From Isurus oxyrinchus (taxonomy: Eukaryota), in NCBI GenBank assembly GCA_026770705.1, contig JANJGN010000724.1, positions 1 to 64,000 on the forward strand: a stretch of DNA of 64,000 bases, read 5' to 3'. The translations under genes and the position numbers were made by a program. Under the pieces are notes generated by a model that was not told the origin of the DNA, did not search any database, and was given only the letters and a program-made list of their open reading frames with translations. The stretch's first letter is position 1; every line of letters begins with the position of its first letter. Below, piece by piece: positions 8,542-63,240 of this stretch.

Positions 8542-8790
8542 TCAGTTTTTCTGGAACCTGATCTGTGTGTATTCCGTGTCCTCGCTCCTGTGCACAGTCC
8601 TGTCACCGCTGGGCAGCTTTGAAAAGTTGATGTTGGCGTAGAAAAGCTCGTCTGGTTTGTCGGGGTTCCCATGTCCAACATCGCCTCCCACTGCATCTTC
8701 AGAGAGACCCCGGGGAGCTGGGGTCTCCCCCTCGCTAGTTGCGTCTCTCTTTGTGTTCTGGGGCTCAGTAATCAGCACGTTCTGTTCATC
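8542..8790 (-). CDS. Gene A terminal cytoplasmic exon, cassette 3 (ITIM LFYANI + ITSM TEYTQI)
   Basis: ctctgtag|GAT GAA CAG; DEQNVLITEPQ...DELFYANINFSKLPSGDRTVHRSEDTEYTQIRFQKN*. Confidence 0.88.
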   Translation of the reverse strand, partial: DEQNVLITEPQNTKRDATSEGETPAPRGLSEDAVGGDVGHGNPDKPDELFYANINFSKLPSGDRTVHRSEDTEYTQIRFQKN

Positions 8791-8909
8791 CTACAGAGAA
8801 ATGGAAACAGAAGACATCCTCACATCAATTACTGTTACTGATAGGGTTAAATTATTGTGCAGACTCATTTAATTCTCTCTCTCCTATCGGATAAAAGAAA
8901 CCACCAATG

Positions 8910-9120
8910 GCAGTGCAGCACTCCCTCAGTACTGACCCTGCAACAGTGCAGCACTCCCTCAGTCCTGACCCTCTGACAATACAGCGCTCCCTCAGTACTG
9001 ACCCATCGACAGTGCAGCACTCCCTCAGTACTGACCCTCTGTCAGTGCAGCACTCCCTCAGTACTGACCCTCCAACAGTGCAGCACTCCCTCAGTACTGA
9101 CCCTCTGTCAGTCTCGCACT
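8910..9120. repeat. 33-bp minisatellite (CAGTACTGAGGGAGTGCTGCACTGTCAGAGGGT family); also at 11955-12205 and 15050-15265
   Basis: Tandem 33-mers. Confidence 0.9.
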
Positions 9121-9254
9121 CAATCGGTAATGGCTCTGGTGAGTGACGGCTTGGATGCTGCACACAGGTGCCTGGTGTGAGGCTCAATAACATGAACCTT
9201 GTAATCAGAGAGAGGATTAGAGAGAGAGATAGAGATGAAAGAACAGAGACAGAG

Positions 9255-10188
9255 TGTTATGAATCTATTAATGTATGTAATGTAATTGCAAACTGTCTTT
9301 TTAAACAGAGGTTTAGTCTGTGTGTGTGCCTGTGTGTATTTTAATTGGATTAAAGCCAGCCAGTCTGTGTGCTTTGATGTATAGTAGTTTTGAGATGTAA
9401 ACAAAGAGGTAAAGTGGTAATTTGCATTTGTAAATAAAATATTAAATGCCTGAGAGTGAAATCTTAAACCAATCAACGTTTATATTACTAATAAAATTGA
9501 TACGATGAACGGGGATTTATTATTGGAAGAGATGGAGTTCAAAGGTCCTGATGATACATTGCGAAATTACCTTCAAACAGAAGCCATAAGACCATAAGAC
9601 ATAGGAGGAGAAATTAGACCATTCGGTCCATCGAGTCTGCTCCACCATTCATACATGGCTGATATGTTTCACAAACCCAATTCTCCAACCTTCTCTCCTA
9701 ACCTTTGATCCCCTGACCAATCAAGAGCGTATCAATCTCCGTCTTCTTTACACTCAAGAGCTGGGTATAACTTGAGCAGATTTGTGTGTGCAGAGCAGAC
9801 GCTTGTAACATCAAAGCAGCTGTAAGCCTACACCTGTCTGCAAAAAAAACAAAGTGAAAGGAACCTCATTTGGAATTTGTGAGGTGAAAATGCTTTGCCT
9901 GGGTGTCTGCTTAAAGTCTATGGGTTATCTTAGAGGAGATTACTTTGGGAATTTGTTAAAAAGTTATGATAATGCTAGCTTGTAGCCATGTGCATATGTT
10001 TAACTTGTGTTAATTAATAAATGTCTCATGTAGTTTGATATAAACCCATCTCAAGAACTGATGGTCTTATTCCTGAATTTAAAGATGCATCTCACACATT
10101 CCACTGGGAAATATAGGTTATGACAGTTGTTTAAAGTTTCCCTCTGGGATTTTAAACAACAGCCTTTACCAGTTGCTGTGTCATAACA
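9255..10188. mobile_element. Solo LTR-like element in each tail cassette (also 12333-13261 and 15415-16167)
   Basis: Inverted termini TGTTATGA...TCATAACA; cassettes 2 and 3 carry an extra ~180-bp LINE/SINE-tail insert. Confidence 0.6.
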
Positions 10189-10323
10189 GAGAGACAGCAT
10201 GATACTGAACCATTGCTGACTCCACAGGTACAAATCAGTGGGTAACTGGGCTGGGAATCTGGGACACGTGTTGTCTACACACTGAGATTGAAGCTTTGGA
10301 GTGAGTGTAAACAGCTCCTGTAC

Positions 10324-10405
10324 CTGGTGCTTCACAGAGAGTGGACTGGGGGTCAATGCAATGTCTCTGGTCCCTGAAACTCTCTCCTCCATCGCTGTCT
10401 TTCTC
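10324..10405 (-). CDS. Gene A juxtamembrane cytoplasmic exon, cassette 3
   Basis: ttgcag|G...CAG|gtacag, 82 nt, phase 2 to 0, RKTAMEERVSGTRDIALTPSPLSVKHQ. Confidence 0.8.
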
Positions 10406-10545
10406 CTGCAATAACACAATATCACACTGTGGTTATCATATAGCAGAGAGTCAGTGCAGCACAGACACAGAGCCCACTGTAACCTTACACCAACGACTGG
10501 GACTGTCTCTTTAAATCAGTTCTGCACAAAGCACAGAATCAAGAA

Positions 10546-11586: not shown

Positions 11587-11835
11587 TCAGTTATGCTCGA
11601 ACCTGATCTGTGCGTATTCCGTCTCCTCTTCCCTGTGGACAGACCCATCACCACTGGACATCCTCAAGACTTGGGGATTGGCGTAGAGAAACTCTTCAGG
11701 TTTGTCGGGGTTCCCATGTCCAACATCGGCTCCCACTGGACGTTCAGAGAGACCCCGGGGAGCTGGGGTCTCCCCCTCGCCAGTTGCGTCTCTCTTTGTG
11801 TTCTGGGGCTCAGTAATCAGCACGTTCTGTTCATC
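11587..11835 (-). CDS. Gene A terminal cytoplasmic exon, cassette 2 (FLYANP + ITSM TEYAQI)
   Basis: ctctgtag|GAT; 249 nt open to the stop, ...EEFLYANPQVLRMSSGDGSVHREEETEYAQIRFEHN*. Confidence 0.82.
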   Translation of the reverse strand, partial: DEQNVLITEPQNTKRDATGEGETPAPRGLSERPVGADVGHGNPDKPEEFLYANPQVLRMSSGDGSVHREEETEYAQIRFEHN

Positions 11836-13396
11836 CTACAGAGAAATGGAAACAGAAGACATCCTCACATCAATTACTGTTACTGATAGGGTTAAATTAT
11901 TGTGCAGACTCATTTAATTCTCTCTCTCCTATCGGATAAAAGAAACCACCTATGGCAGTGCAGCACTCCCTCAGTACTGACCCTCCAACAGTGCAGCACT
12001 CCCTCAGTGCTGACCCTCCGACAATACAGCGCTCCCTCAGTACTGACCCATCGACAGTGCAGCACTCCCTCAGTACTGACCCTCTGTCAGTGCAGCACTC
12101 CCTCAGTACTGACCCTCCAACAGTGCAGCACTCCCTCAGTACTGACCCTCCAACAGTGCAGCACTCCTTCAGTACTGACCCGCTGTCAGTCCCGCACTCC
12201 CTCGGTAATGGCTCTGGTGAGTGACGGCTTGGATGCTGCATACAGGTGCCTGGTGTGAGGCTCAATAACATGAACCTTGTAATCAGAGAGAGGATGAGAG
12301 AGAGAGATAGAGATGAAGGGATAGAGACAGAGTGTTATTAATCTATTAATTTTTGTATTGTAATTGCAAACTGTCTTTTTAAACAGAGGTTTAGTCTGTG
12401 TGTGTGTCTGTGTGTATTTTAATTGGATTAAAGCCAGCCAGTCTGGGTGCTTTGATGTATAGTAGTTTTGAGATGTAAACAAAGAGGTAAAGTGGTAATT
12501 TGCATTTTTAAATAAAACATTAAATGCCTGAGAGTGAAATCTTAAACCAGTCAACGTTTATATTACTAATAAAATTGATACGATGAAAGGGGATTTATTA
12601 TTGGAAGAGATGGAGTTCAAAGGTCCTGATGATACATTACCAATTTACCTTCAAACAGAAGCCATAAGACCATAAGACATAGGAGGAGAAATTAGACCAT
12701 TCGGTCCATCGAGTCTGCTCCACCATTCATACATGGCTGATATGTTTCACAAACCCAATTCTCCCACCTTCTCTCCTAACCTTTGATCCCCTGACCAATC
12801 AAGAGCGTATCAATCTCCGTCTTCTTCACACTCAAGAGCTGGGTATAACTTGAGCAGTTTTGTGTGTGCAGAGCAGACGCTTGTAACAGCAAAGCAGCTG
12901 TAAGCCTACACTTGTCTGCAAAGGAACCAAAGTGAAAGGAACCTCATTTGGAATTTGTGAGGTGAAAATGCTTTGCCTGGTGTCTGCTTAAAGACAATGG
13001 GTTGTCTTAGAGGAGATTAGTTTGAGAATTTGTTAAAAATTTTTGATAATACTAGTTTGTAGCCATGTGCATATGTTTAACTTGTGTAAATTAATAAATG
13101 TCTCAAGTAGTTTGATATAAAACCATCTCGAGAACTGCTGCTCTTATTCCTGAATTTAGAGATGCATCTCAAACATTCCACTGGGAAATTTTATGACAGT
13201 TGTTTAAAGTTTCCCTCTGGGATTTTAAACAACAGCCTTTACCAGTTGCTGTGTCATAACAGAGAGACTGCATGATACTGAACCATTGCTGACTCCACAG
13301 GTACAAATCAGTGGGTAACTGGGCTGGGAATCTGGGACATGTGTTGTCTACACACTGAGATTGAAGCTTTGGAGTGAGTGTAAACAGCTCCTGTAC

Positions 13397-13478
13397 CTGG
13401 TGCTTCACAGAGAGTGAACTGGGGGTCAATGCAATGTCACTGGTCCCTGAAACTCTCTCCTCCATCGTTGTCTTTCTC
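13397..13478 (-). CDS. Gene A juxtamembrane cytoplasmic exon, cassette 2
   Basis: 82 nt, AG/GT intact, RKTTMEERVSGTSDIALTPSSLSVKHQ. Confidence 0.78.
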
Positions 13479-14655: not shown

Positions 14656-14904
14656 TCAGTTATGCTCGAACCTGATCTGTGCGTATTCCGTCTCCTGTTC
14701 CCTGTGGACAGACCCATCACCACTGGACATCCTCAAGACTTGGGGATTGGCATAGAGAAACTCTTCAGGTTTGTCGGGGTTCCCATGTCCAACATCGGCT
14801 CCCACTGCACCTTCAGAGAGACCCCGGGGAGCTGGGGTCTCCCCCTCACTAGTTGCGTCTCTCTTTGTGTTCTGGGGCTCAGTAATCAGCACGTTCTGTT
14901 TACC
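14656..14904 (-). CDS. Gene A terminal cytoplasmic exon, cassette 1 (FLYANP + ITSM TEYAQI)
   Basis: ctctgtag|GGT AAA CAG; 249 nt open to the stop, ...HREQETEYAQIRFEHN*. Confidence 0.82.
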   Translation of the reverse strand, partial: GKQNVLITEPQNTKRDATSEGETPAPRGLSEGAVGADVGHGNPDKPEEFLYANPQVLRMSSGDGSVHREQETEYAQIRFEHN

Positions 14905-16302
14905 CTACAGAGAAATCGAAACAGAAGTTATCCTCACATCATTTACTGGCACTGATAGGGTTAAATTATTGTGCAGCCTTGTTAATGTCAGTCGTGTCTC
15001 AGTTGGTTTAACCCTCTCTCTCATGTCATATGAAAGATACCACCTATGGCAGTGCAACGCTCCCTCAGGACTGACCCTCCGACAATACAGCGCTCCCTCA
15101 GTACTGACCCTCCGACAGTGCAGCGCTCCCTCAGTACTGACCCTCCGACAGTGCAGCGCTCCCTCAGTACTGACACTCCGACAGTGCAGCTCTCCCTCAG
15201 TACTGACCCTCTGACAGTGCAGCACTCCCTCAGTACTGACCCTCTGTCAGTCTTGCACTCCCTCGGTAATGGCTCTGGTGAGTGACAGTTGGATTCTGCA
15301 CTCAAGTGTCTGGTGTGAAGCTCATTAACATGCACCTTGTAATCAGAGAGAGGATGAGAGAGAGAGAAAGAGAGAGAGAGAGAAAGAAAGGGAGGTTGGG
15401 ATAGAGAGAGAGACTGTCATGATGCGATTAATAAATATCATGTTATTGGAAATTATTTTTATTCACATCGGGGTTTAGTCTGTGGGTGTGTCTGTGTGTG
15501 TTTTAATTGGATTAAAGCCAGCCAGTCTGGGTATTTGATGTATAGTAGTTTTGAGATGTAAACTGAGGCATAAAAATTTGTATTTTTAAACAGAGCATTC
15601 AACGCCTGAGAGTGAAATCTTAAACCAATCAACATTTATTTTATTGATAAAATTGATACTATGACAGAGGATTTATTGTGAAAAGAGATGGAGTTCAAAG
15701 GTCCTGATGATACAATGAGAATTTACATTCAAAGAGAAGCACTGGGTATAACTTGAGCAGTTTTGTGTGTGCAGAGCAGAGGCTTGTAACATCAAAGCAG
15801 CTGTAAGCCTGCACCTGTCTGCAAAGGAACCAAAGTGAAAGGAACCTCATTTGGAATTTGTGAGGTGTAAATGCTTTGCTGGAATCTGCTTAAAGTCTAT
15901 GGGTTGTCTTAGAGGAGATTAGTTTGGGAATTTGTTAAAAAGTTATGATAATGCTAGCTTGTAGCCATGTGCATATGTTTAACTTGTGTAAATTAATAAA
16001 TGTCTCATGTAGTTTGATATAATACTATCTCGAGAACTGGTGGTCCTATTCTTGAATTTAGAGCTGCATCTCAAACATTCCACTGGGAAATATAGGTTAT
16101 GACAGTTGTTTAAAGTTTCCCTCTGGGATTTTAAACAACAGCCTTTACCAGTTGCTGTGTCATAACAGAGAGACAGCATGATACTGAACCATTGCTGACT
16201 CCACAGGTACAAATCAGTGGGTAACTGGGCTGGGAATCTGGGACATGTGTTGTCTACACACTGAGATTGAAGCTTTGGAGTGAGTGTAAACAGCTCCTGT
16301 AC

Positions 16303-16384
16303 CTGGTGACTCACAGAGAGTGGACTGGGGGTCAATGCAATGTCACTGGTCCCTGAAACTCTCTCCTCCATCGCTGTCTTTCTC
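16303..16384 (-). CDS. Gene A juxtamembrane cytoplasmic exon, cassette 1
   Basis: tttcag|G AGA AAG...CAG|gtacag; an extra in-frame donor TCT|GTGAGT at 16315. Confidence 0.8.
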
Positions 16385-17105: not shown

Positions 17106-17202
17106 TTTCTCACACAGATGAAGATGAAGATTTCAGCCAGTAAAACACTCAACATGATCCCAGCCGTGAACAATCCTACTGTCCATTTACTGGTGTCTCT
17201 AC
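17106..17202 (-). CDS. Gene A transmembrane exon
   Basis: ttttacag|GT...AA|gtaag; RDTSKWTVGLFTAGIMLSVLLAEIFIFICVRK; phase 1 to 2 fits both neighbours. Confidence 0.88.
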
Positions 17203-17298: not shown

Positions 17299-17547
17299 NN
17301 NNNNNNNNNNNNNNNNNNNNNNNNNNNNNNNNNNNNNNNNNNNNNNNNNNNNNNNNNNNNNNNNNNNNNNNNNNNNNNNNNNNNNNNNNNNNNNNNNNNN
17401 NNNNNNNNNNNNNNNNNNNNNNNNNNNNNNNNNNNNNNNNNNNNNNNNNNNNNNNNNNNNNNNNNNNNNNNNNNNNNNNNNNNNNNNNNNNNNNNNNNNN
17501 NNNNNNNNNNNNNNNNNNNNNNNNNNNNNNNNNNNNNNNNNNNNNNN
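17299..17547. other. Assembly gap (249 N)
   Basis: Run of n. Confidence 1.
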
Positions 17548-17578: not shown

Positions 17579-17860
17579 GTTCCACAGTGATGGTTATGAA
17601 CCCCTCCACTGCTCCATGTTCATTCTCTGCCACACACTGATAGTCTCCAGTGTCCCTGCATGTAACGTGAGGAATCACCAACCACAGCTCATTGTTGGAA
17701 CTTGTTCTGTTCATTGGGACATTAAGATGTCGCCACGTCAGGTTAGAAGCTGGGAAGCTCTCGACAGAGCAGATTATCACTGCAGAATTCCCCTCAATTA
17801 TATTGATCGATGAAGCATTAATCATATCAAGAGAAGTAATTGAGAGATTCTGTGGTGCGT
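17579..17860 (-). CDS. Gene A second C2/I-set Ig exon
   Basis: YAPQNLSI...IICSVESFPASNLTW...DTGDYQCVAENEHG...ITVE; tttcag| and |gtgagt; 282 nt. Confidence 0.92.
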
Positions 17861-22271: not shown

Positions 22272-22568
22272 ATTGCACCGTTAGTACGAGGGTCCGCTCC
22301 GATGAAACAGATGGATATCTCACTCTGCAGCTGAGAGTGTGTCCGTGGTGTTTGAGTGATGGGATCAGGGTCAGAACAGAAGTATAGGTCAGAGTGACAC
22401 CATGCTGAGTTACAGTGTTTGAGACTGATCCAGGTACGTCAGTGGGAGTGTCCCAGGTTAAGACAGGTGCTGCTGTTCCATTGCACGTTGTGTTGAAGGT
22501 GCAGCTTACATCCACACGCTTTCCTGCAATAATTTCAGCAGGGAATATCGTGGGTTTATCTGTGAAAT
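22272..22568 (-). CDS. Gene A first C2-set Ig exon
   Basis: DFTDKPTIFPAEIIAGKRVDVSCTFNTTCNGTAAPVLTW...SVLTLIPSLKHHGHTLSCRVRYP...LTVQ; Siglec domain-2 pattern with the extra Cys; 297 nt. Confidence 0.93.
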
Positions 22569-23883: not shown

Positions 23884-24252
23884 CAGAAACGTGAAGCTGG
23901 GTTACAGGGTAATAGTTATGGCTCGGACCATTGTCAAATTCTATTCTGAAATAATAAGGTCCTGCATCTTCCCGTCTGATGTTGTTTATAATCAGGGAAC
24001 AGTCGCCATCTTTCAGGTCTCCAGACAGCCGGGTCCGACTGTGGAACCGTGGTAACTCGTGACTGTGATCCTTGGAGTGAAAGGCAATGGGAGGCCAGGG
24101 AATCTGTTTCTCATTATTAAACCAGAGTCCGACTTGTCGTTTGTTTTCAAAATATGCTGGATAACTGTAGTGACACCGAATCTGTACACACGAACCTTCC
24201 TGCGCTGTCACCTCTCGTGGAGTGTCACCTTTCCACTCTTGTGACAGTCCAA
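23884..24252 (-). CDS. Gene A V-set Ig exon, essential Arg present
   Basis: EGSCVQIRC...W...GDLKDGDCSLIINNIRREDAGPYYFRIE; Siglec Cys pattern (no F-strand Cys) and F-strand Arg; 369 nt, phase 1-1. Confidence 0.95.
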
Positions 24253-25145: not shown

Positions 25146-25185
25146 CTTGGAGAAGTGACAGGAGGCAGTAATATTTCCCGATCAT
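25146..25185 (-). CDS. Gene A signal-peptide exon (coding part; the exon starts at 25225)
   Basis: ATG...CAA G|gtaat = MIGKYYCLLSLLQ, joins the V exon as VGLS-QEW. Confidence 0.88.
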
Positions 25186-25959: not shown

Positions 25960-27900
25960 TAAATACTGAGCAAATGCGGCACCATCAGGGGGTCAGTACT
26001 GATGGGGTGCTGCTCTGTCGCAGGATCAGGTCTGAAGAAGTGCTGCTCTGTTGGAGGGTCAGCAGCAAAGGAGTTCTGCACTGTAGAGTATTGGTGTATT
26101 GTTCCTGAGGGCGTGCTGCACTGTCAGAGGGTCAGTACTGAGGGAGTGCTGCACTGTCAGAGGGTCAGTACTGAGGGAGTGCTGCACTGTCAGAGGGTCA
26201 GTACTGAGGGAGTGCTGCACTGTCAGAGGGTCAGTACTGAGGGAGTGCTGCACTGTCAGAGGGTCAGTACTGAGGGAGTGCTGCACTGTCAGAGGGTCAG
26301 TACTGAGGGAGTGCTGCACTGTCAGAGGGTCAGTACTGAGGGAGTGCTGCACTGTCAGAGGGTCAGTACTGAGGGAGTGCTGCACTGTCAGAAGGTCAGT
26401 ACTGAGGGAGTGCTGCACTGTCAGAAGGTCAGTACTGAGGGAGTGCTGCACATTCAGAGGGTCAGTACTGAGGGAGTGCTGCACTGTCGGAGGGTTAGCA
26501 CTGAGGTAGTGCTGCACTGTCAGAGGGTCAGTACAGAGGGAATGCTGCACTGTCGGAGGCTCAGTACTGAGGTAGTGCTGCACTCTTGGAGGGACAGTTC
26601 TGAGGAGTGCTGCCCTGTCGGAGGGTCAGTACTGAGGGAATGCTGCACTGTCAGAGTCTTGTTCCTGAGGGAGTGCTGCACTGTCAGAGGGACAGTACTG
26701 AGGGAGTGCTGCACTGTCAGAGGGTCAGTACTGAGGGAGTGCTGCACATTCAGAGGGTCAGTACTGAGGGAGTGCTGCACTGTCGGAGGGTACGTACTGA
26801 GGTAGTGCTGCACTGTCAGAGGGTCAGTACAGAGGGAATGCTGCACTGTCGGAGGCTCAGTACTGAGGTAGTGCTGCACTCTTGGAGGGACAGTTCTGAG
26901 GAGTGCTGCACTCTTGGAGGGACAGTTCTGAGGAGTGCTGCCCTGTCGGAGGGTCAGTACTGAGGGAGTGCTGCACTGTCAGAGTCTTGTTCCTGAGGGA
27001 GTGCTGCACTGTCAGAGGGACAGTACTGAGGGAGTGCTGCACTGTCAGAGGGTCAGTACTGAGGGAGTGCTGCGCTGTCAGAGGGTCAGTACTGAGGGAG
27101 TGCTGCACTGTTGGAGGGTCAGAACTGAGGTAGTGCTGCACTGTCGGAGGGTTAGTACTGAGGTAGTGCTGCACTGTCATAGGGTCAGTACTGAGGGAGT
27201 GCTGCACTGTCGGAGGGTCAGTACTGAGGGAGTGCTGCACTCTTGGTGTGTCAGTACTGAGGGAGTGCTGCACTGTCAGAGGGTCAGTATTGAGGAAGTG
27301 CTGGACACTTGGTGTGTCAATACTGAGGTAGTGTCGCACTCTTGTATGGTCAGTACTGAGGGAGTGCTGCACTGTTGGAGGGTCAGTACTGAGGGAGTGC
27401 TGCACTGTCGGAGGGTCAGTACTGAGGGAGTGCTGCACTGTCGGAGGGTCAGTACTGAGGGAGTGCTGCACTGTCAGAGTCTTGTTCCTGAGGGAGTGCT
27501 GCACTGTCAGAGGGACAGTACTGAGGGAGTGCTGCACTGTCAGAGGGTCAGTACTGAGGGAGTGCTGCACATTCAGAGGGTCAGTACTGAGGGAGTGCTG
27601 TGCTGTCAGAGGGTCAGTACTGAGGGAGTGCTGCACTGTTGGAGGGTCAGAACTGAGGGAGTGCTGCACTGTCGGAGGGTCAGTACTGAGGTAGTGCTGC
27701 ACTGTCGGAGGGTCAGTACTGAGGTAGTGCTGCACTGTCGGAGGGTCAGTACTGAGGTAGTGCTGCACTGTCAGAGGGTCAGTATTGAGGAAGTGCTGGA
27801 CACTTGGTGTGTCAATACTGAGGTAGTGTCGCGGTCTTGTATGGTCAGTACTGAGGGAGTGCTGCACTGTTGGAGGGTCAGTAGTGAAGGAGTGCTGCAC
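25960..27900. repeat. 33-bp minisatellite, ~1.9 kb
   Basis: (CAGTACTGAGGGAGTGCTGCACTGTCAGAGGGT)n with higher-order variant blocks. Confidence 0.97.
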
Positions 27901-28238
27901 TATCTAAAGAACATTGTACAAGTTTCACAAAATTGCATCGAATGCCTTTGTCTCACTAACTTCAAATTTAGAACAGGAATATTTCTCGCTGTTTCTGAGC
28001 AGCAAGGCAGCTTTGATATCACACCACCCAATGGCAGGAGTGCCTAACTACAATGTGACATGTTTACATGGGAAGTTTCCATTATAAAGATGGGCACAAT
28101 AATTCACATGATTGGAAAATCGTCACAACATGAAGTAATGTCTTTGAGCCAAGATTTTGCAGTAAAATGAGAAATTTTATGTGTAAATATCTACAGAACA
28201 GGCTGAGCATTTTAATCACTTGTGTTAATCAATGTAAT

Positions 28239-28581
28239 TTTATTCATAACACAAATGCTTCTTACAATCTATCGCAGCATGAAAAAGGTGCAGCATTCAG
28301 AAAGCACATTCCAATCAGAGAACAGAGTTTAGCAACGTCACATTTCTGTTCATTCCTATTCGACCATGTTGGCTGCACACAGCCAGACAATGCCGTGGTT
28401 ATGATGTGTCCACACAGCAGGACTGGGGAGCACCAGGTATAAGGAAAAGTTTCAGCTTGCTGAGGAGAAGAAGGAGAATCTCTCGTTCCAGGTTTCTCTC
28501 CGTACATTAAGAAGCAGGCATGCCGATGTTTCATTGCACTCTGTCTGCTGATGGGAGTCCGTTTGGAAATTGCTGTTTGTG
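28239..28581 (-). other. Unit B terminal exon / 3' UTR
   Basis: ccatcag| acceptor, AATAAA at 28239-28244, near-identical to 62898-63240, distal part homologous to the gene A UTR at 8370-8520. Confidence 0.55.
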
Positions 28582-28599
28582 CTGATGGAAAGAATAAGC

Positions 28600-29200
28600 T
28601 TTTCATAAATCGAGGGATTGAGTTCAAACACAGGGAGGTTATGCTGAACATTTATAAAGCTCTGGTTAGGTCACAACTAGAGTATTGTGTCCAGTTCTGG
28701 TCTCCTCACTTTGGGAAGGAAGTGAGTGTCCTTGAGAGGGTGGGGAGGAGATTGAGCAGAATGGGTCCAGGGATGAGGGATTTTAGCTACAAGGTTGGGT
28801 TGGAGAAGCTGGGGTTGTTCTCCTTGGAGCAAAGGAGATTGAGGGGGGATCTGATCGAGGTGTACAAGATGATGATGGGTTTAGATACGGTAGACAAAGA
28901 GAAGCTGTTGCCATTAGCTGATGGGACAAGGACTGGGGGACACAGATTGAAGGTTTTGGGCAGAGGGGGATGTGAGGAGGAACTTTTTTACACAGCGAGT
29001 GGTAATGAGCTGGAACTCGCTGCCTACGAGGATGGTGGAAGTGGAGACGAACGATTTCAAAAGGAAATTGGATGGATACTTGGAAATAAACTTGCAGAGA
29101 TACGGGGATAGAGAGGGGGAATGGGACTGACTGGATTGCTCGACAGAGAGACAGCATGGACTCAATGGGCTGAATGGTCTCCCACTGTGCTGGAATGCCT
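28600..29200 (+). mobile_element. CR1 LINE 3' end (inverted twin at ~62275-62880)
   Basis: LVRSQLEYCVQFWSPH...LGLFSLEQRRLRGDLIEVYKMM. Confidence 0.9.
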
Positions 29201-29313
29201 CTCTGATACGAAGGTGATTCTAACCAGGACACTGACCAGTTTCAGTACAACTTAACACAACATCACACGTTATTTGTCTGCACTGACTGACCAGATTGTT
29301 GCTGTACAAAGCT

Positions 29314-29453
29314 TCAAACAGTCTGTCGACTTCCTTTCACTGTTTGTCTCTCCCAGACACAGACTCCAGCGATAGTGATAACCACAGCCACAAGGAATAT
29401 CACAGCTCGTATTCCCAGGATCAGGATCACGTGCAGAATCTCTCCTCCACTGT
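29314..29453 (-). CDS. Unit B transmembrane exon with Arg (activating type)
   Basis: ctctag|AC AGT...: SGGEILHVILILGIRAVIFLVAVVITIAGVCVWERQTVKGSRQTV*. Confidence 0.75.
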
Positions 29454-30964
29454 CTAGAGAACACACAGAAAGAAATCATCACTGACTCTCCGCTTTCAAT
29501 CTCTCACTCTGGCTGAACAATCAAGCTTCATATCACTGCAACATTTGCTGTAATATTGACCCATCCACTGGGATTCAATGTGGAATGAATGTTTTCATTG
29601 TAAACACTCTAAGAGTGGACAATCGGAACTTTCCCCTTAGCGTGGAACATTGGTGAGAATGGATCATTGTGCTGTTGGACTCCCTGTCCAATGTTTCTCT
29701 CTATTGCTGTGTACAGGATTGTGCCGTAGAAAATTCTGGAAACGTTTAGTGCCGGGTGGAAATCCATCTCGGACATGTGTGCGTATCAGGCAGGATCGAG
29801 ATGGACTCCCCCACGGACTTACACCCCCCGCTTAATAAACAGTTCCAATCTTTACCCAGAGAGAGGGGAGAATGTGGAACTCACTCCCATAGGGATTGGT
29901 TGAGGTGAACAGGATCGATGTATTTAAGGGGCAGGAGGGTCGGTAACCAGAGGGACACAGATTGACGAACCGGAGGGGGAGATGAGGAGAATTTGTTTTG
30001 ACAGAGCGAGTTGTTGTGATCTGGAAGGTGCTGCCTGAAAGGGCGGTGGAAGCAGATTCAATAGGAACTTTCAAAAGTGGAATTGTATAAACACTTGAAG
30101 GAGGAAGATGGGGGCAAAGTGGAGTGGTGGTTAGTGGATCTGATGGGATAGAACATTGAAAAACCTGGCACAGGCACCATGGGCTGAATGGCCTCCTCCT
30201 GTGCTGTACCATTCTCCGCTTCCATGATCTCTCCCCCAGTCAGTAACCACTCCAGATCCCTCTTGAAGTTGACAGAGAAACAGCAACCACCACACCCACT
30301 GACAGCACATTCCCGAGGATCACTACTCTCTGGGAAAAGATGAACTCCCCAACATCCAGCCTATTCCTGCTTCCCAGAGAGTGTAAACCCTTCAGGGAGG
30401 CGCTGAGGAAGTTTTCAATAAAATGACATCAAATCCACCGTTTGAGAAATAATTGAATTCCGATGAACTCACAGCTTGTGGAGCAAACTGGGAAGTAGAG
30501 TTGCTTGGAAAGCTGGGAAACACAAGGATTAAGGGCTACAATGCCACCACTGATGGGAGGCTGTAACTGCAGCGTGACGTTTACATAGGCAGTCATCATT
30601 ATAAACAGGGGCATTGGACATAATGGGAATTATGTGCACGGAAATAGTGAGAACATTATTTAAGCTTTTCACCAGCAGGAATTCTCTTCCTAAACCTCTC
30701 CAACTCTCTCTTACTCTCAGATACACAAAGAAAATCACACAGAATCAGATAAGGAAGAGTTGGGTTGGTGATTCGTCAAAGAGTTAGGTTTCAGGAAGCT
30801 TCTTAAAAGGAGAGAGAGAGTTGGAGACGCAGAGAGTATCTGTGAGTGCCTCTATGCATCTGAGTGTCTGTAATAGTAATTTCCATATTCTTCCATAAAT
30901 ATGAATGGGAACACAAATCCCAGAATTCAGGCCAACTCTCCAGTGCAGTACTGAGGGAGTACTG

Positions 30965-31020
30965 ACATTCCAACTGGGGAGAGAAATATCAATATTTAAC
31001 TCTGGATGGTTTGTAGATCC
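30965..31020 (-). pseudogene. Unit B V-exon remnant: acceptor plus ~10 nt, fused to SINE-derived sequence
   Basis: tttctctccccag|TTGGAATGTCA versus the V start TTGGACTGTCA; the rest of V is absent. Confidence 0.75.
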
Positions 31021-31834
31021 AATAGACTCGATATCCACCCCCTCCATCACTGGGGCACAGTGGCTGCAGTGTGGACCATCTACAGGACACACAAGGATCT
31101 CCCCAAGGTTTCACAATGGATGGAAGAGAATCCTGGTCACAGGAGTGGACAAGTTCATTCTACATTGGCTCATGGTCCTCAGGACCCTGTTTAGTGAAGC
31201 CAGTCTTCCACCCAACACAGTGTCTACAAGATACACAGGGAAACTGTGTAAATATCTCATCTCTCTACACCGACTGGTTTGTCTTCGGTTTAACTTTCAG
31301 TTATTTTACTTCCTTATTGTGGTTGCTATGGTGAAACTGTGCAGGAAGTGCGAGGGCTGGACTCTCTGTCTATTCTGACTGCAGCTGTGATGTGGTCGTG
31401 GTGATTCTCAGTAAAATGAAACCCTCTGAGCTCCCCCATCCCCGAGGTTTAGGGAGTGAATTCCAGAGCTCAGGCCCCAGGCAGCTGAAGGCCCGGCCGC
31501 CAGTATTGGAGTGATGGGAATCGGGGGATGGTCAAGAGGCCGGAATTGGAGTAACACAGAGATCTGGGACTTTGGTTGGGAGAGTTGCAGGAGCTTACAG
31601 AGATAAGGAGGCAGTGTGAGGCAATGGATGCATTTGAACAAAGAGATGTGACTTTTAAGTTTGAGATGTTGTAGGACCAGGAGACAGATAGTTTAGGGGT
31701 GATGGGTGAATGGGACTTGGTGTGAGCTTGTACACTGGCTCACTGCTGAATCGGTTCCCAATAACAGCTCAATAAGAATGATCTTTTACAAAGGCTATTA
31801 ACCATAAATCTGTCCGAGCTGACGATGATATTAC

Positions 31835-35006: not shown

Positions 35007-35091
35007 GTGTTATTATGTAAACGTCAGAGTTTGTGTTCATTCCCATTGAGTGTTGAATGTGAATGTTGAGTAATTATAACACCGCACATAC

Positions 35092-45176: not shown

Positions 45177-45216
45177 ATGATCGGGAAATCCTACTTCCTC
45201 CTGTCACTTCTCCAAG
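45177..45216 (+). CDS. Gene D signal-peptide exon (the exon starts at 45137)
   Basis: MIGKSYFLLSLLQ G|gtaat. Confidence 0.88.
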
Positions 45217-52945: not shown

Positions 52946-53320
52946 TTGGACTATCACAAGTGTGGAAAGGTGACACTCCAGGAGAGGTGACAGCGCAGGA
53001 AGGTTCGTGTGTACAGATTCCATGTAATTACAGTTATCCATCATATTTAGTAGCGAGATCACCAGTCGGAATCTGGTATATGAGAAGGAATTGGGAAAAA
53101 TGGAATGAACGGTCTATAGCCTTTCACTCCAAGGATCATAATCGCGAGTTACCACAGTTCCACCATCGGACCCAGCTGTCTGGAGACCTGAAAGATGGCG
53201 ACTGTTCCCTGATTATAAACAACATCAGACGGGAAGATGCAGGATATTATTTATTCAGCCTAGAATTTGACAACAGGAATAGATACAACGACCGTCCTGA
53301 AACCCAGCTTCACGTTTCTG
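52946..53320 (+). CDS. Gene D V-set exon V1 (essential Arg replaced by Ser)
   Basis: 375 nt open; ...EDAGYYLFSLEFDNRNRYNDRPETQLHVS. Confidence 0.9.
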
Positions 53321-56724: not shown

Positions 56725-57093
56725 TTGGACTGTCACAAGAGTGGAAAGGTGACACTCCACGAGAGGTGACAGCTCAGGAAGGTTCGTGTGTACAGATTCC
56801 ATGTCATTACAGTTATCCATCGTGTCTGGAAAACCAACCGCGAGGTGGACTCTGGTTTAATAATGAGAAACAGATTCCCTGGGCTCCCATTGCCTTTCAC
56901 TCCAAGGATCACAGTCACGAGTTACCACGGTTCCGCCATCGGACCCGGCTGTCTGGAGACCTGAAAGATGGCGACTGTTCCCTGATTATAAACAACATCA
57001 GACGGGAAGATGCAGGACCTTATTTTTTCAGAATAGAATTTGACAATGGTCCGAGCCATAACTATTACCCTGTAACCCAGCTTCACGTTTCTG
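56725..57093 (+). CDS. Gene D V-set exon V2 (Arg present)
   Basis: 369 nt open; EDAGPYFFRIE; 12 aa differences from the gene A V. Confidence 0.93.
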
Positions 57094-59030: not shown

Positions 59031-59399
59031 TTGGACTGTCACAAGAGTGGAAAGGTGACAATCCACGAGAGGTGACAGCTCAGGAAGGTTCGTGTGTACA
59101 GATTCCATGTCATTACAGTTATCCATCGTTTCTGGAAAACCAACCGCGAGGTGGACTCTGGTTTAATAATGAGGAACAGATTCCCTGGGCTCCCATTGCC
59201 TTTCACTCCAAGGATCACAGTCACGAGTTACCACGGTTCCGCCATCAGACCCGGCTGTCTGGAGACCTGAAAGATGGCGACTGTTCCCTGATTATAAACA
59301 ATGTCAGACGGGAAGATGCAGGATCTTATTTTTTCAGACTAGAATTTGACAATGGTCCGAGCCATAACTATTACCCTGTAACCCAGCTTCACGTTTCTG
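59031..59399 (+). CDS. Gene D V-set exon V3 (Arg present)
   Basis: 369 nt open; EDAGSYFFRLE; 7 aa differences from V2. Confidence 0.93.
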
Positions 59400-60127: not shown

Positions 60128-60424
60128 ATTTCACAGATAAACCCACGATATTCCCTGCTGAAATTATTGCAGGAAAGCGTGTGGATGTAAGCTGCACCTT
60201 CAACACAACGTGCAATGAAACAGCAGCACCTGTCTTAACCTGGGACACTCCCACTGACGTACCTGGATCAGTCTCAAACACTGTAACTCAGCATGGTGTC
60301 ACTCTGACCTATACTTCTGTTCTGATCCTGATCCCATCACTCAAACACCACGGACACACTCTCAGCTGCAGAGTGAGATATCCATCTGTTTCATCGGAGC
60401 GGACCCTCGTACTAACTGTGCAAG
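60128..60424 (+). CDS. Gene D first C2-set exon
   Basis: 297 nt; 2 aa differences from the gene A C2-1; CAA G|gtaaga. Confidence 0.92.
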
Positions 60425-60747
60425 GTAAGAACGGACACCCTTCATTCTACGTCAGCACTCCCTCAGTGCTGACCCTCTGACAGTGCAGCCCGTTCTCAGT
60501 ATCCACATTCTCAGACCTCTCAAAGTGCTTCACAGTCGATAGAAGTTAACTGATCTTTAATTGATTATTGCTGAATGAAGAGACAATCTGCCTAAACTTT
60601 ACAGCTCGCACACATTATTTTCCATGGCAACACCTCCTCCAATCAGAGACCACTTGCCAATCAATCAGCACTCTCTTCCCATTAAATATAAATTGTTGTT
60701 CACTTCCTGTTGGTAAACCTGTGATCTGTCATGTTGAGTCCTGCCCT

Positions 60748-60901
60748 GACATCTGAATATCACAATGAACAGAACAAGTTCCAACAATGAGCTGTTGTTG
60801 GTCATTCCTCACGTTACATCCAGGGACACTGGAGACTATCAGTGTGTGGCAGAGAATGAACATGGAGCAGTGGAGGGATTCATAACCATCACTGTGGAAC
60901 G
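60748..60901 (+). pseudogene. Gene D second C2 exon, 5'-truncated
   Basis: Only HLNITMNRTSS...YQCVAENEHG...TVE|gtgagt remains; the acceptor and first half are not found. Confidence 0.8.
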
Positions 60902-62017
60902 TGAGTGTACACAGACTTCAACATCTCTCACAGATTCAAACACTACACAAACACACACAATTATACAAACCTAAATAGACACCTGCAGACCCACAATCCC
61001 ACATGTATGAGCACACAAAAGGACACACTCACAACCAAACACACTAACACATTCTCCCCCGTGGGTTACCTGACCTCCCTCAGTGCTGCACCGGAGAGTT
61101 GACATGGATTCTGGGAATTGTGTTCCCTTTCAGGTTTATGGAAGAACGCGGAAATTGCAAAGTCTATTAGACACCCAGATGCACAGAGTTTCTCACAGAT
61201 ACTCTCTGCCTCTCTAACTCTCTATCCTTCTTTAAAAAGCTTCCTGAAACCTAACCCTTTGACCAGTCACCTGTCCCAACTCCTCCTGATTAATTCTGTG
61301 TGAAATGTTGTTTGAGTATCTGACAGTAAGAGAGAGATGGAGAGGTTTACGAAGGCATTTCTGTTGGTGAAAAGCTTACATCATGTTCTCACCTTTCCAG
61401 AGCCCATTTTGCACATGATGTCCAATGTCCCTGTTCATAATGGGGATTGCCTATGTAAACGTCACGCTGCAGTTACACTCTCCCACCAGTGGTGGCATGG
61501 TAGCACTTAACCCTTGCATCTCCCAGCTTTTCAAGCAATTTCACTTCCCAATTTGCTACTACTCACCTGAACCACTCCCTGTGGGAGCGAGTTCCACATT
61601 CTCCCCTCTCTCTGGGTAAAGATTGGAACTGTTTATTAAGCGGGGGGTGTAAGTCCGTGGGGGAGTCCATCTCAATCCTGCCCGATTCGCACACACGTCC
61701 GAGATGGATTTCCACCCTGCACTAAACGTTTCCAGAATTTTCTACAGCACAATCCTGTACAGAGCGATGGAGAGAAACATTGGACAGGGAGTCCAACAGC
61801 ACAATGATCCATTCTCACCAATGTTCCACGCTAAGAGGAAAGTTCCGATTGTCCACTCTTAGAGTGTTTACAATGAAAACATTCATTCCACATTGAATCC
61901 CAGTGGATGGGTCAATATTACAGCAAATGTTGCAGTGATATGAAGCTTGATTGTTCAGCCAGAGTGAGAGATTGAAAGCGGAGAGTCTGTGATGATTTCT
62001 TTCTGTGTGTTCTCTAG

Positions 62018-62157
62018 ACAGTGGAGGAGAGATTCTGCACGTGATCCTGATCCTGGGAATACGAGCTGTGATATTCCTTGTGGCTGTGGTTATCACTATC
62101 GCTGGAGTCTGTGTCTGGGAGAGACAAACAGTGAAAGGAAGTCGACAGCCTGTTTGA
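62018..62157 (+). CDS. Gene D transmembrane exon with Arg and a short tail
   Basis: DSGGEILHVILILGIRAVIFLVAVVITIAGVCVWERQTVKGSRQPV*; Arg codon at 62062-62064. Confidence 0.8.
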
Positions 62158-62897
62158 AGCTTTGTACAGCAACAATCTGGTCAGTCAGTGCAGACAAATA
62201 ACGTGTGATGTTGGGTTAAGTTGTAATGAAACTGGTCAGTGTCCTGGTTAGAATCACCTTCGTATCAGAGAGGCATTCCAGCACAGTGGGAGCCCATTCA
62301 GCCCATTGAGTCCATGCTGTCTCTCTGTAGAGTAATCCAGTCAGTCCCATTCCCCCGCTCTATCCCCGTATCCCTGTGAGTTTATTTCCCCTCAAGTGTC
62401 CATCCAATTTCTTTTCGAAATCGTTCATCGTCTCCACTTCCACCATCCTCGTAGGCAGCGAGTTCCAGCTCATAACCACTCGCTGTGTAAAAAAGTTCCT
62501 CCTCACATCCCCCCTCTGCCCAAAACCTTCAATCTGTGTCCCCCAGTCCTTGTACCATCAGCTAATGGCAACAGCTTCTCTTTGTCTACCTGATCTAAAC
62601 CCATCATCATCTTGTACACCTCGATCAGGTACCCCCTCAATCTCCTTTGCTCCAAGGAGAACAACCCCAGCTTCTCCAACCCAACCTTGTAGCTAAAATC
62701 CCTCATCCCTGGACCCATTCTGCTCAATCTCCTCCCCACCCTCTCAAGGACCCTCACTTCCTTCCCAAAGTGAGGAGACCAGAACTGGACACAATACTCT
62801 AGTTGTGACCTAACCAGAGCTTTATAAATGTTCAGCATAACCTCCCTGTGTTTGTTCTCAATCCCTCGATTTATGAAAAGCTTATTCTTTCCATCAG

Positions 62898-63240
62898 CAC
62901 AAACAGCAATTTCCAAGCGGACTCCCATCAGCAGACAGAGTGCAATGAAACATCGGCATGCCTGCTTCTTAATGTACGGAGAGAAACCTGGAACGAGAGA
63001 TTCTCCTTCTTCTCCTCAGCAAGCTGAAACTTTTCCTTATACCTGGTGCTCCCCAGTCCTGCTGTGTGGACACATCATAACCACGGCATTGTCTGGCTGT
63101 GTGCAGCCAACATGGTCGAATAGGAATGAACAGAAATGTGACATTGCTAAACTCTGTTCTCTGACTGGAATGTGCTTTCTGAATGCTGCACCTTTTTCAT
63201 GCTGCGATAGATTGTAAGAAGCATTTGGGTTATGAATAAA
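62898..63240 (+). other. Gene D terminal exon / 3' UTR
   Basis: ccatcag| acceptor, AATAAA at 63235-63240, homology to the gene A UTR. Confidence 0.55.

What the first reader, a model, noticed from the sequence alone, without database searches (positions are those of the whole stretch)
8542..63240. Head-to-head paired inhibitory/activating Siglec-like receptors in a probable cartilaginous fish
Seen: A (minus, Tyr-motif tails) and D (plus, Arg in the TM, short tail with no Tyr if read through) have almost the same leader, V and C2-1, but unrelated TM and tail exons. Known: human SIGLEC5/14 and SIGLEC11/16 are such pairs, kept similar by gene conversion, with the activating member using a basic TM residue to engage DAP12. 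Inference: an independently evolved paired-receptor system, with exon cassettes at both the ligand end (3 V in D) and the signalling end (3 tails in A).
Basis: partly seen in the sequence, partly recalled or inferred. Interest (0 to 1): 0.85.

Follow-up and report, generated by a model that had tools for sequence, protein, structure and literature searches.

The report
Shark paired Siglec-type receptor genes
This stretch of a lamniform shark genome holds Siglec-type immune receptor genes with nearly the same sugar-sensing outer part, one ending in inhibitory tyrosine motifs and one (seen spliced in RNA) in an arginine-bearing membrane anchor; this on/off pairing is described for mammalian Siglecs but in no shark paper I found, although automatic annotation already predicts such proteins in other sharks.

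Summary
Gene A (minus strand) has leader, V, C2-1, C2-2, an uncharged-type TM exon and three tandem 3-kb tail cassettes. The distal cassette carries an ITIM plus ITSM-like motif.

Gene D (plus strand) has one leader, three V exons, C2-1, a truncated C2-2 relic, and a TM exon with an arginine and a stop 13 codons after the membrane span.

A and D nucleotide identity:
- leader: 89%
- V: 94.6%, 92.7% and 81.7% for V2, V3 and V1
- C2-1 exon: 99%
- TM exons: no detectable similarity

The N gap lies inside an intron of A. Flanking splice sites and phases fit, but its content is unknown.

RNA contigs from three runs join C2-1 to the Arg-TM exon at GT..AG, and join V2 or V3 directly to C2-1.

The V domains carry the Siglec hallmarks. 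Best solved relatives are MAG, Siglec-7, Siglec-5 and CD33.

The family occurs across elasmobranchs, and RefSeq already names its members Siglec or CD33-like. The Arg-TM exon is conserved in three shark orders.

A and D are not adjacent. A pseudogenised, rearranged D-like copy (B) lies between them.

Adaptor, ligand and opposing signalling are inferred. This scan has already reported the same kind of cluster on at least eight other pieces of this genome.

The parts
25146..25185 (-). Gene A leader exon, coding part (MIGKYYCLLSLLQ, phase-1 donor GT)
   Evidence: 89% nt identity to D's leader region.
23884..24252 (-). Gene A V-set exon (Siglec type, YYFR motif, phase 1-1)
   Evidence: Pfam V-set and Ig_CD22. 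PDB best hits are MAG, Siglec-7, Siglec-5 and CD33. Splice sites read.
22272..22568 (-). Gene A C2-1 exon
   Evidence: Pfam C2-set_2. 100% aa identity to white shark P0180. The TVQ-Y-APQN junction to C2-2 is the one found in 37 relatives.
17579..17860 (-). Gene A C2-2 exon (Ig_3/I-set type)
   Evidence: 95.7% aa identity to white shark P0172.
17299..17547 (.). Assembly gap (N) inside the intron between A's C2-2 and TM exons. Content and true length unknown; not filled.
   Evidence: Donor lies 30 nt before the gap and the AG acceptor 94 nt after it, with compatible phases.
17106..17202 (-). Gene A TM exon (RD.SKWTVGL... type, no basic residue). It has a Glu where 13 relatives have Gly.
14656..16384 (-). 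Proximal tail cassette. Exon t1 is 16384-16303. Exon t2 is 14904-14656 (FLYANP, TEYAQI, stop), with an internal donor CAG|GT after TEYAQIR.
   Evidence: Serial use of this donor appears in white shark and basking shark models.
11587..13478 (-). Middle tail cassette (t1 13478-13397, t2 11835-11587), same motifs as the proximal cassette
8542..10405 (-). Distal tail cassette. Exon t1 is 10405-10324. Exon t2 is 8790-8542, with ITIM LFYANI, ITSM-like TEYTQI and the stop at 8544-8542.
   Evidence: 80-84% aa identity to lamniform inhibitory tails.
45177..45216 (+). Gene D leader exon, coding part (MIGKSYFLLSLLQ)
52946..53320 (+). Gene D V1 exon. Intact frame, but the essential Arg is replaced by Ser (YYLFS).
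   Evidence: Not covered by the RNA stretch I laid.
56725..57093 (+). Gene D V2 exon (YFFR). RNA contigs splice it directly to C2-1.
   Evidence: Joint 57093>60128 in X2 and X7. 97.5% aa identity to white shark Arg-TM protein P0169.
59031..59399 (+). Gene D V3 exon (YFFR). RNA contigs splice it to C2-1 and to a leader.
   Evidence: Joint 59399>60128 in X1 and X2. Leader-like loose end at 59029 in X1.
60128..60424 (+). Gene D C2-1 exon
   Evidence: 3 of 294 nt differ from A.
60748..60900 (+). Relic 3' half of a C2-2 exon in D (95.4% to A). Stops lie upstream in frame. Its donor is used in one contig.
   Evidence: Joint 60900>62018 in X4.
62018..62179 (+). Gene D Arg-TM exon (..ILHVILILGIRAVIF.., short tail, stop at 62155-62157, donor at 62179/62180)
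   Evidence: Joint 60424>62018 in X1, X2 and X7. The same C-terminus occurs in 8 proteins of 4 shark species.
62898..63255 (+). Gene D 3'UTR exon. The acceptor lies in a transposon-derived stretch. 63095-63260 is 78% identical to A's 3'UTR. AATAAA at 63235.
   Evidence: X1 loose end at 62179 matches 62898-62927 exactly..
27488..36622 (-). Copy B, a rearranged D-like pseudogene. Leader at 36.6 kb has an 8-bp deletion and donor GT>CT. V 35457-35092 has CGA>TGA. There is a partial C2-1 (34544-34439) and a full C2-1 (33718-33422). An intact stray leader sits at 31910-31821. The Arg-TM exon 29453-29314 is 99.3% identical to D. The 3' module is 97-98% identical to D 61563-63262.

Best explanation
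The window is part of a large elasmobranch-specific cluster of Siglec-type Ig receptors. The genome is a lamniform shark's, closest to the white shark.

Gene A encodes a type I membrane protein: a Siglec V-set with the sialic-acid Arg, C2-1, C2-2, an inhibitory-type TM, and a cytoplasmic tail. The tail is built from one to three duplicated cassettes, each carrying tyrosine motifs. Only the distal cassette has a canonical ITIM (LFYANI). All three have an ITSM-like TEY(A/T)QI.

Gene D encodes a two-domain receptor. It combines one of several alternative V exons with C2-1, an Arg-bearing membrane span and a 13-residue tail without tyrosine.

Shown here:
- the exon structures
- the A/D similarity confined to leader, V and C2-1
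- splicing of V2 or V3 to C2-1, and of C2-1 to the Arg-TM exon, in RNA
- conservation of both signalling ends in other sharks

Inferred:
- both proteins bind similar sialylated ligands through the Arg-containing V domain
- A recruits SH2 phosphatases through its phosphotyrosines and damps activation
- D pairs through its membrane Arg with an acidic residue of an ITAM adaptor (DAP12-like or FcR-gamma-like) and activates

D descends from an A-like gene. It still carries a C2-2 relic and A-type 3'UTR sequence, and it gained an exon with an early stop. Ectodomain exons have been exchanged or re-duplicated between the two types repeatedly during shark evolution.
For: Siglec identity:
- Pfam V-set, Ig_CD22 and C2-set_2
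- The 17 best PDB hits are all Siglecs, with YFFR Arg and the B- and E-strand cysteines aligned

Gene models:
- Canonical AG/GT sites and phase-compatible junctions that reproduce the junction residues of RefSeq proteins of relatives

RNA:
- GT..AG joints 57093>60128, 59399>60128 and 60424>62018 in contigs of 2-3 runs, from two organism labels and at least two studies
- Onward splice 62179>62898
- AATAAA at 63235

Conservation:
- The ..ILGIR.. TM with the same short tail ends proteins of Carcharodon, Scyliorhinus canicula, S. torazame and Chiloscyllium at 78-93% identity
- The inhibitory TM and tails are 71-88% identical to lamniform proteins

Descent of D from an A-like gene:
- D 60504-60566 and 60748-60931 match the intron before A's C2-2 exon, the 3' half of that exon and the start of the intron after it
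- D 63095-63260 matches A's 3'UTR

Exchange between the two types:
- V domains of Arg-TM proteins are not one clade (AU p 0.001)
- In S. torazame an Arg-TM protein and an ITIM protein share near-identical V domains (98-99 SH-aLRT clades)
- The C2-1 tree groups by taxon, with both types mixed
- C2-1 exon dS is 0.013, against 14-20% divergence of the adjacent introns and dS 0.09-0.11 in V
Against: - No direct RNA evidence for A in this species. My single reads call covered only D. Support for A comes from relatives' models and from loose ends that show C2-1>C2-2-type splicing in the same sample, with one mismatch to A.
- Contigs were accepted at 95% likeness or more. The genome holds many paralogues, so some joints may come from sister copies. 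The V2>C2-1 contig of X7 has 1 mismatch in 258 nt. The TM contig of X7 has 4 in 148.
- A's TM has Glu where 13 relatives have Gly. No canonical poly(A) signal follows A's distal exon.
- A and D differ at 12 of 122 V residues, clustered in the loop after the B strand. Identical ligand specificity is therefore not assured.
- Non-coding A-D identity is only 80-92%, far from the >99% tracts of primate SIGLEC5/14.
- Adaptor, ligand and signalling direction are untested.
- The N gap could hide further exons.
Confidence: 0.7

Rival explanations
1. A and D are simply two members of a fast birth-and-death multigene family. They are not a functional pair. They share ancestry and a conserved stalk domain but recognise different ligands, and are not co-expressed or co-regulated.
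For: - The family has very many copies in this genome and in other elasmobranchs.
- A's V differs from D's V2 and V3 mainly in the exposed loop after the B strand.
- D's V2 is closer to a white shark Arg-TM protein (97.5%) than to A (90%).
- Introns are only 80-92% identical.
- A and D are separated by copy B.
Against: - Both signalling types recur with near-identical ectodomains within single species, for example S. torazame P0006 and P0160.
- The C2-1 exon is nearly identical at synonymous sites despite diverged introns.
- C2-1>Arg-TM and C2-1>C2-2-type splices occur in contigs of the same sample.
Confidence: 0.25
2. One or both genes of this particular window are decaying copies. They may be transcribed but are not functional, and the working pairs lie elsewhere in the cluster.
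For: - Neighbour B is demonstrably broken: nonsense codon, leader deletion, lost donor.
- D's V1 lost the binding Arg.
- D carries a half C2-2 exon whose donor is used in one contig that has a 1-nt deletion in the TM exon.
- A has an odd Glu in its TM and no AATAAA.
Against: - Every exon of A, and V2, V3, C2-1 and TM of D, are open with canonical splice sites.
- Productive C2-1>TM joints are seen in three runs.
- V dN/dS for A versus D2 is 0.5, below neutrality.
Confidence: 0.15
3. The proteins have the Siglec fold but are not sialic-acid lectins. They bind proteins or other glycans, and the Arg-TM form is a decoy or co-receptor rather than an ITAM-coupled activator.
For: - Binding was not tested.
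- V1 lacks the Arg.
- The TM Arg sits about 8-11 residues into the span and is accompanied by a His, which does not single out a known adaptor.
Against: - The Arg in the Y-F-F-R context, the N-terminal Trp and the Siglec cysteine pattern are conserved across the family in sharks and rays.
- A basic TM residue with a very short tail is the standard signature of adaptor-coupled receptors (general knowledge; review PMC13358205).
Confidence: 0.15

Closest known systems
Human/primate SIGLEC5-SIGLEC14 and SIGLEC11-SIGLEC16 paired receptors
   Same: - Linked Siglec genes with very similar V and first C2 domains.
- One has an ITIM plus ITIM-like tail; the other has a basic TM residue and a short tail.
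- Ectodomain similarity is maintained by sequence exchange (PMC4042635, PMC5701461).
   Different: - Separate origin. The shark pairs arose within an elasmobranch clade.
- Similarity tracts are older and mosaic: 80-99%, not >99%.
- The activating gene has three alternative V exons, and the inhibitory tail is built from repeated cassettes.
- The adaptor is unknown.
Mammalian CD33-related Siglecs
   Same: - A rapidly diversifying multigene cluster.
- V plus C2 architecture.
- A tail with L-x-Y-A-x-(L/I)-N-F followed by T-E-Y-x-(E/Q)-I, very like CD33 and Siglec-10-type tails.
   Different: - The V domains are not nested in the tetrapod CD33-related-type clade (99 SH-aLRT). A sister relation can be neither shown nor rejected (AU p 0.27).
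- The N-terminal Trp motif resembles MAG, sialoadhesin and CD22.
- Synteny was not testable.
MAG (Siglec-4) / Schwann cell myelin protein-like
   Same: - Best PDB match of the V domain (E 1e-13).
- Shark MAG-like and SMP-like proteins lie near the family in the V tree.
- The SMP-like protein of Heptranchias has a similar LHYACI..TQYAEI tail.
   Different: - MAG is a conserved single-copy five-domain adhesion protein.
- Here there is a large, variable family with 2-3 domains and paired signalling ends.
RefSeq-predicted shark proteins (e.g. Carcharodon carcharias XP_041037177 'CD33-like'; the Arg-TM models P0169, P0173 and P0184; Scyliorhinus torazame XP_072325011)
   Same: - Same exon modules.
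- Same Arg-TM C-terminus (93% identical).
- Same inhibitory TM and tails.
- Multi-V and multi-cassette models.
   Different: - These are automatic predictions with borrowed mammalian names.
- None was described in any paper I could find.
- The window's species is a close relative, or has other paralogues, rather than an identical copy.
Other paired Ig-superfamily receptors (KIR, LILR/PIR, CEACAM1/CEACAM3-like, teleost NITR and LITR)
   Same: Activating/inhibitory design, basic TM residue versus ITIM, and concerted or birth-and-death evolution (PMC2832619, PMC4810170).
   Different: Different Ig domain families and ligands. Here the ligand-binding domain is a Siglec V-set.

Membership tests
Siglec (I-type lectin) family | N-terminal V-set Ig domain most similar to Siglec V-sets | tested here: met
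   Pfam V-set and Ig_CD22 above cut-off for all five V exons. The 17 best PDB sequence hits are all Siglecs: MAG, Siglec-7, -5, CD33, -8, sialoadhesin, -10.
Siglec (I-type lectin) family | Essential sialic-acid-binding Arg on the F strand (Y-x-F-R context) | tested here: met
   YYFR or YFFR in A's V, D's V2 and V3, and B's V, aligned with the Arg of MAG and Siglec-7. D's V1 fails this test: it has Ser (YYLFS).
Siglec (I-type lectin) family | Siglec cysteine pattern: B-strand C-x5-C, an E-strand Cys, and an extra Cys in the first C2 domain | tested here: met
   SCVQI(P/R)C and DCSL align with the cysteines of MAG and Siglec-7. C2-1 has three Cys. This was read from alignments, not from a structure.
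Siglec (I-type lectin) family | Binds sialylated glycans | not testable with these tools
   Needs Fc-fusion and glycan-array experiments.
CD33-related Siglecs | V domain groups inside the CD33-related clade | tested here: not met
   A 99 SH-aLRT split puts the tetrapod CD33-related-type sequences apart from the shark family, MAG-like, Sn and CD22. A sister-group relation is not rejected (AU p 0.27).
CD33-related Siglecs | Cytoplasmic membrane-proximal ITIM plus distal ITIM-like motif | tested here: met
   The distal cassette has LFYANI followed by TEYTQI. The proximal and middle cassettes have FLYANP (not an ITIM) followed by TEYAQI.
CD33-related Siglecs | Location in the conserved CD33rSiglec genomic neighbourhood | not tested
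   No framework genes lie in the window. Its flanks are repeats and transposon fragments.
Paired activating/inhibitory immune receptors | Linked genes with highly similar ectodomains but different TM and tail | tested here: met
   V 92.7-94.6% nt, C2-1 exon 99%, TM exons unalignable. The genes are 20 kb apart, with pseudogene B between them.
Paired activating/inhibitory immune receptors | Activating member: basic residue in the TM, short tail without signalling motif | tested here: met
   Arg in ..ILGIRAVIF.., then a 13-residue tail and a stop. Conserved in four other shark species.
Paired activating/inhibitory immune receptors | Activating member associates with an ITAM adaptor; inhibitory member recruits phosphatases | not testable with these tools
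Paired activating/inhibitory immune receptors | Both members expressed | tested here: inconclusive
   D-type splices are seen in 3 runs. Only C2-1>C2-2-type loose ends in the same sample, and relatives' models, support it.
Paired activating/inhibitory immune receptors | Ectodomain similarity maintained by gene conversion | tested here: inconclusive
   Divergence is mosaic: C2-1 exon dS 0.013, adjacent introns 14-20% diverged, V dS about 0.1. V domains cluster by lineage and not by TM type. No formal conversion-tract test was run, and no outgroup DNA was available.

The most novel reading that the evidence does not exclude
Elasmobranchs evolved their own fast-diversifying Siglec family that plays the role of mammalian CD33-related Siglecs. 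It would include true activating/inhibitory pairs, and it would be modular at both ends. Alternative V exons, some without the sialic-acid Arg, would set ligand choice. Serially or alternatively spliced ITIM/ITSM cassettes would set signal strength. That would make self-sialic-acid sensing with paired decoy-proof receptors a recurrent solution across at least 400 million years of jawed-vertebrate history.
Probability: 0.45. Interest if true: 0.65.

Novelty: new member of a known kind. Interest (0 to 1): 0.5.

Why it matters
Paired Siglecs are taken as a primate or mammalian answer to pathogens that mimic sialic acids. Fish are described as having only the four conserved Siglecs and lacking inhibitory CD33-related ones (PMC7226832, on bony fish).

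A transcribed pair in sharks, conserved in several shark orders, would show that the design arose independently and early. It would give comparative immunologists a second natural experiment on how such pairs are kept matched. It would also point to shark leukocyte markers and checkpoints.

The practical novelty is limited. RefSeq already predicts these proteins under mammalian names in many elasmobranchs, and this scan has reported the same kind of cluster on other pieces of the same genome.

Tried and rejected
- **Gap breaking A's frame: rejected.** The gap is intronic and the flanking exons join in phase.
- **D as three separate genes: rejected.** The plus strand has only one leader, one C2-1 and one TM exon, and RNA joins V2 or V3 to the same C2-1.
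- **Pro>Arg next to the B-strand Cys of A's V (IRC) as a defect: rejected.** Human Siglec-7 has the same residue.
- **C2-1 as a family marker: not useful.** Its best PDB hits are nectin-4 and PVR; CD33 comes only at E 2e-3.
- **Placing the family as CD33-related: not supported by the tree.** The alternative, sister to the CD33-related clade, is not rejected either.
- **Pfam on the tail ORF: nothing.**
- **Literature:** searches for Siglec with shark, cartilaginous fish or Callorhinchus, and a 2025 review of sialoglycan-binding proteins, gave no description of shark Siglec pairs. PMC3015071 is not held.
- **Joined models:** I did not search or fold any joined (spliced) protein model. Exons were searched one by one by reference, and that joined step is left out.
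- **Structure prediction:** none was run, because sequence matches to solved Siglecs were already decisive.

Full report
**What is in the window.** This is vertebrate DNA rich in satellites and transposon fragments. Five V-set exons, three C2-1 exons, one full and one half C2-2 exon, two kinds of TM exon and three tail cassettes can be read. All have AG/GT boundaries and the phase-1 symmetry typical of Ig exons. I searched exons one at a time by reference.

**Gene A (minus strand).**
- Leader with ATG at 25185, V 24252-23884, C2-1 22568-22272, C2-2 17860-17579, TM 17202-17106.
- Three tandem 3-kb cassettes follow, 92-94% identical to each other. Each has a juxtamembrane exon (KRKTAMEER...) and a terminal exon.
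- The proximal and middle terminal exons read ..FLYANP..TEYAQIRFEHN-stop. The distal one reads ..LFYANINF..TEYTQIRFQKN-stop, ending at 8542.
- Every junction reproduces the junction residues of RefSeq proteins of relatives: HVS-D-FTDKP, TVQ-Y-APQN (37 relatives), ITVE-R-RD.SKW and CVRK-RKTA.

**The gap.** The N run 17299-17547 begins 30 nt after the C2-2 donor and ends 94 nt before the AG acceptor of the TM exon. It is intronic and the flanking exons join in phase. Its true length and content are unknown. D's homologous intron is where the Arg-TM exon sits, so hidden exons cannot be excluded. I did not try to fill it.

**Gene D (plus strand).**
- Leader 45177-45216, V1 52946-53320, V2 56725-57093, V3 59031-59399, C2-1 60128-60424.
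- A half C2-2 exon at 60748-60900, with stops upstream in frame.
- TM exon 62018-62179. It encodes ..GGEILHVILILGIRAVIF..CVW followed by ERQTVKGSRQPV and a stop at 62155-62157.
- A 3'UTR exon starts at 62898, with AATAAA at 63235.
- V1 has Ser where the sialic-acid-binding Arg should be.

**A versus D.**
- Nucleotide identity: leader region 89%, V 94.6/92.7/81.7% (V2/V3/V1), C2-1 region 97.5%.
- The two TM exons do not align at all.
- D keeps sequence from the intron before A's C2-2 exon, the 3' half of that exon, and 166 nt of A-type 3'UTR. D is therefore a derivative of an A-like gene that acquired a new terminal coding exon.

**The neighbour B.** Between A and D lies a minus-strand D-like copy.
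- Its leader has an 8-bp deletion and a GT>CT donor.
- Its V has a CGA>TGA stop.
- It has a partial extra C2-1 and a stray intact leader.
- Its Arg-TM-to-poly(A) module is 97-98% identical to D's.

The true head-to-head pair is therefore B/D. A is tandem to B.

**Expression.** Contigs are from X1 and X2 (one sample, organism label A) and from X4 and X7 (organism label B, other studies). They show GT..AG joints:

| Joint | From | To | Runs |
|---|---|---|---|
| V2 > C2-1 | 57093 | 60128 | X2, X7 |
| V3 > C2-1 | 59399 | 60128 | X1, X2 |
| C2-1 > Arg-TM | 60424 | 62018 | X1, X2, X7 |
| C2-2 relic donor > Arg-TM | 60900 | 62018 | X4 |

- The X7 contig for V2 > C2-1 has 1 mismatch in 258 nt.
- The X4 contig carries a 1-nt deletion in the TM exon, so it is probably from a paralogue or an unproductive form.
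- A leader-like sequence abuts V3 at 59029 in X1.
- A loose end at 62179 matches 62898 exactly.
- Loose ends after C2-1 run into C2-2-type and other C2-type exons, so longer family members are expressed in the same sample.

Caveats:
- Contigs were accepted at 95% likeness or more, and paralogues are many.
- Contigs cannot give expression levels.
- No V2>V3 joint was among the 15 listed; 8 more were not shown.

**Family identity.**
- Pfam gives V-set and Ig_CD22 for the V exons, C2-set_2 for C2-1, and Ig_3/I-set for C2-2.
- Against solved structures, the V of A matches MAG, Siglec-7, Siglec-5, CD33, Siglec-8, sialoadhesin and Siglec-10 at E 1e-13 to 9e-10. Siglec-15 and CD22 are weaker. The YFFR Arg and the Siglec cysteines are aligned.

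**Relatives.**
- A full HMMER scan found 1170 proteins with E up to 0.001, 28 of them below 1e-30.
- Every relative above about 45% identity whose source I looked up is elasmobranch. RefSeq names them Siglec-5/7/8/10/11/12/13/14/15, CD33-like or MAG-like.
- They come from sharks of several orders, and from rays, skates and sawfish.
- The closest are white shark proteins: V2 97.5% to P0169, C2-1 100% to P0180, C2-2 95.7% to P0172.

**Conservation of the two signalling ends.**
- The ..ILGIR.. TM with the same short tail ends eight proteins of Carcharodon, two Scyliorhinus species and Chiloscyllium.
- The inhibitory TM and tails are likewise conserved.
- In four white shark and basking shark models the cassettes are joined in series (..TEYAQIR-RKTA..). 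The join uses a donor inside the terminal exon that is also present in the window (CAG|GTTCGA).
- Other models stop after one cassette.
- The 'three tails' are thus cassettes that can probably be used alone or concatenated. This is inferred from relatives' models, not shown for this locus.

**Evolution.**
- In a C2-1 tree, sequences group by taxon with both TM types mixed.
- In a V tree, the V domains of Arg-TM proteins are not one clade (AU p 0.001). S. torazame Arg-TM and ITIM proteins share near-identical V domains.
- Within the window, divergence is mosaic:

| Segment | Comparison | Divergence or identity |
|---|---|---|
| C2-1 exon | A vs D | dS 0.013 |
| Introns next to C2-1 | A vs D | 80-86% identical |
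| V exon | A vs D2/D3 | dS 0.09-0.11 |
| Intron after V2 | A vs D | 90% identical |
| Intron after the leader | A vs D | 80% identical |
| 3' module | B vs D | 97-98% identical |

. This fits repeated exchange or re-duplication of ectodomain exons between the two receptor types. It is not the fresh, long conversion tracts of SIGLEC5/14.
- With named references, a 99 SH-aLRT split separates the tetrapod CD33-related-type sequences from the rest. The references were Tupaia Siglec-12, Xenopus Siglec-12-like, frog sialoadhesin, shark and sawfish CD22-like, and Heptranchias MAG-like and SMP-like.
- The shark family forms its own clade on the MAG/SMP/Sn/CD22 side of that split.
- A tree making the shark family sister to the CD33-related-type clade is not rejected (AU p 0.27). 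'Independent expansion' is therefore supported. 'Not related to CD33rSiglecs' is not established.

**Mechanism.**
- Shown: structure, splicing and conservation.
- Inferred from what is established for paired Ig receptors (PMC13358205, PMC4042635):
  - A's phosphorylated ITIM and ITSM-like motifs recruit SH2 phosphatases.
  - D's membrane Arg pairs with an acidic residue of an ITAM adaptor.
  - Both receptors see sialylated ligands through the Arg-bearing V domain.
- Which adaptor is involved cannot be said.

**Oddities of A:** a Gly>Glu change in its TM, unique among 13 relatives, and no canonical poly(A) signal.

**Novelty.**
- Papers describe paired Siglecs in primates.
- One paper states that fish have only four conserved Siglecs and lack inhibitory CD33-related ones (PMC7226832).
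- I found no paper on shark Siglec pairs.
- Automatic annotation already predicts both forms in several sharks.
- Earlier notes of this scan report the same kind of cluster on at least eight other pieces of this genome.
- I rate it a new member of a known kind, of moderate interest.

Noticed in passing
window 40445-40561 (minus strand): An orphan open exon ends ..DDDLYANCEFAEDSVYGNL-stop. It is a third kind of tyrosine-motif tail, lying between B's broken leader and D's leader beside a retroelement. No matching upstream exons are in the window.
   Followed up: partly
window 52946-53320: D's V1 exon belongs to a distinct V subtype (YMRRNWEKW loop). It is closest to the first V of basking shark P0003. 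In this genome it has Ser for the essential Arg, whereas the white shark and basking shark counterparts keep Arg.
   Followed up: partly
window 17106-17202: A's inhibitory-type TM has Glu (LLAEIFIF) where all 13 relatives with this TM have Gly. This could be a real variant, a damaging change or a sequencing error.
   Followed up: partly
window 25950-27900, 32705-33210, 18002-18347, 44063-44374, 63597-64000: Large arrays of a 33-bp satellite sit between and inside the receptor genes. They read as long fake ORFs such as ..CTVRGSVLRECCTV.. and may mark rearrangement breakpoints. One array lies between B's C2-1 exon and the stray leader at 31.9 kb.
   Followed up: no
window 493-5177: A 4.5-kb C/T-rich low-complexity block (GC skew -0.97) gives 1200-1400-codon pseudo-ORFs of Pro/Ser/Leu. 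It is not a gene.
   Followed up: no
window 41478-43742 (minus) and 21323-21727 (plus): Retroelement remains. The first has gag- and protease/integrase-like ORFs and lies between B and D. The second is a LINE reverse-transcriptase fragment in A's C2-1>C2-2 intron. D's 3'UTR exon acceptor (62898) lies in a transposon-derived stretch (minus-strand ORF 62503-62928).
   Followed up: no
window 60424 and 60900 (loose ends): RNA contigs that share D-like C2-1 or C2-2 sequence continue into C2-2-type exons (ATGCACCACAGAAT..) or another C2 type (..YKPEISQQSE..). Longer multi-C2 family members are therefore expressed in the same samples.
   Followed up: no
window 37890-39110: A tandem repeat array of roughly 43-bp units lies upstream of B's broken leader.
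   Followed up: no
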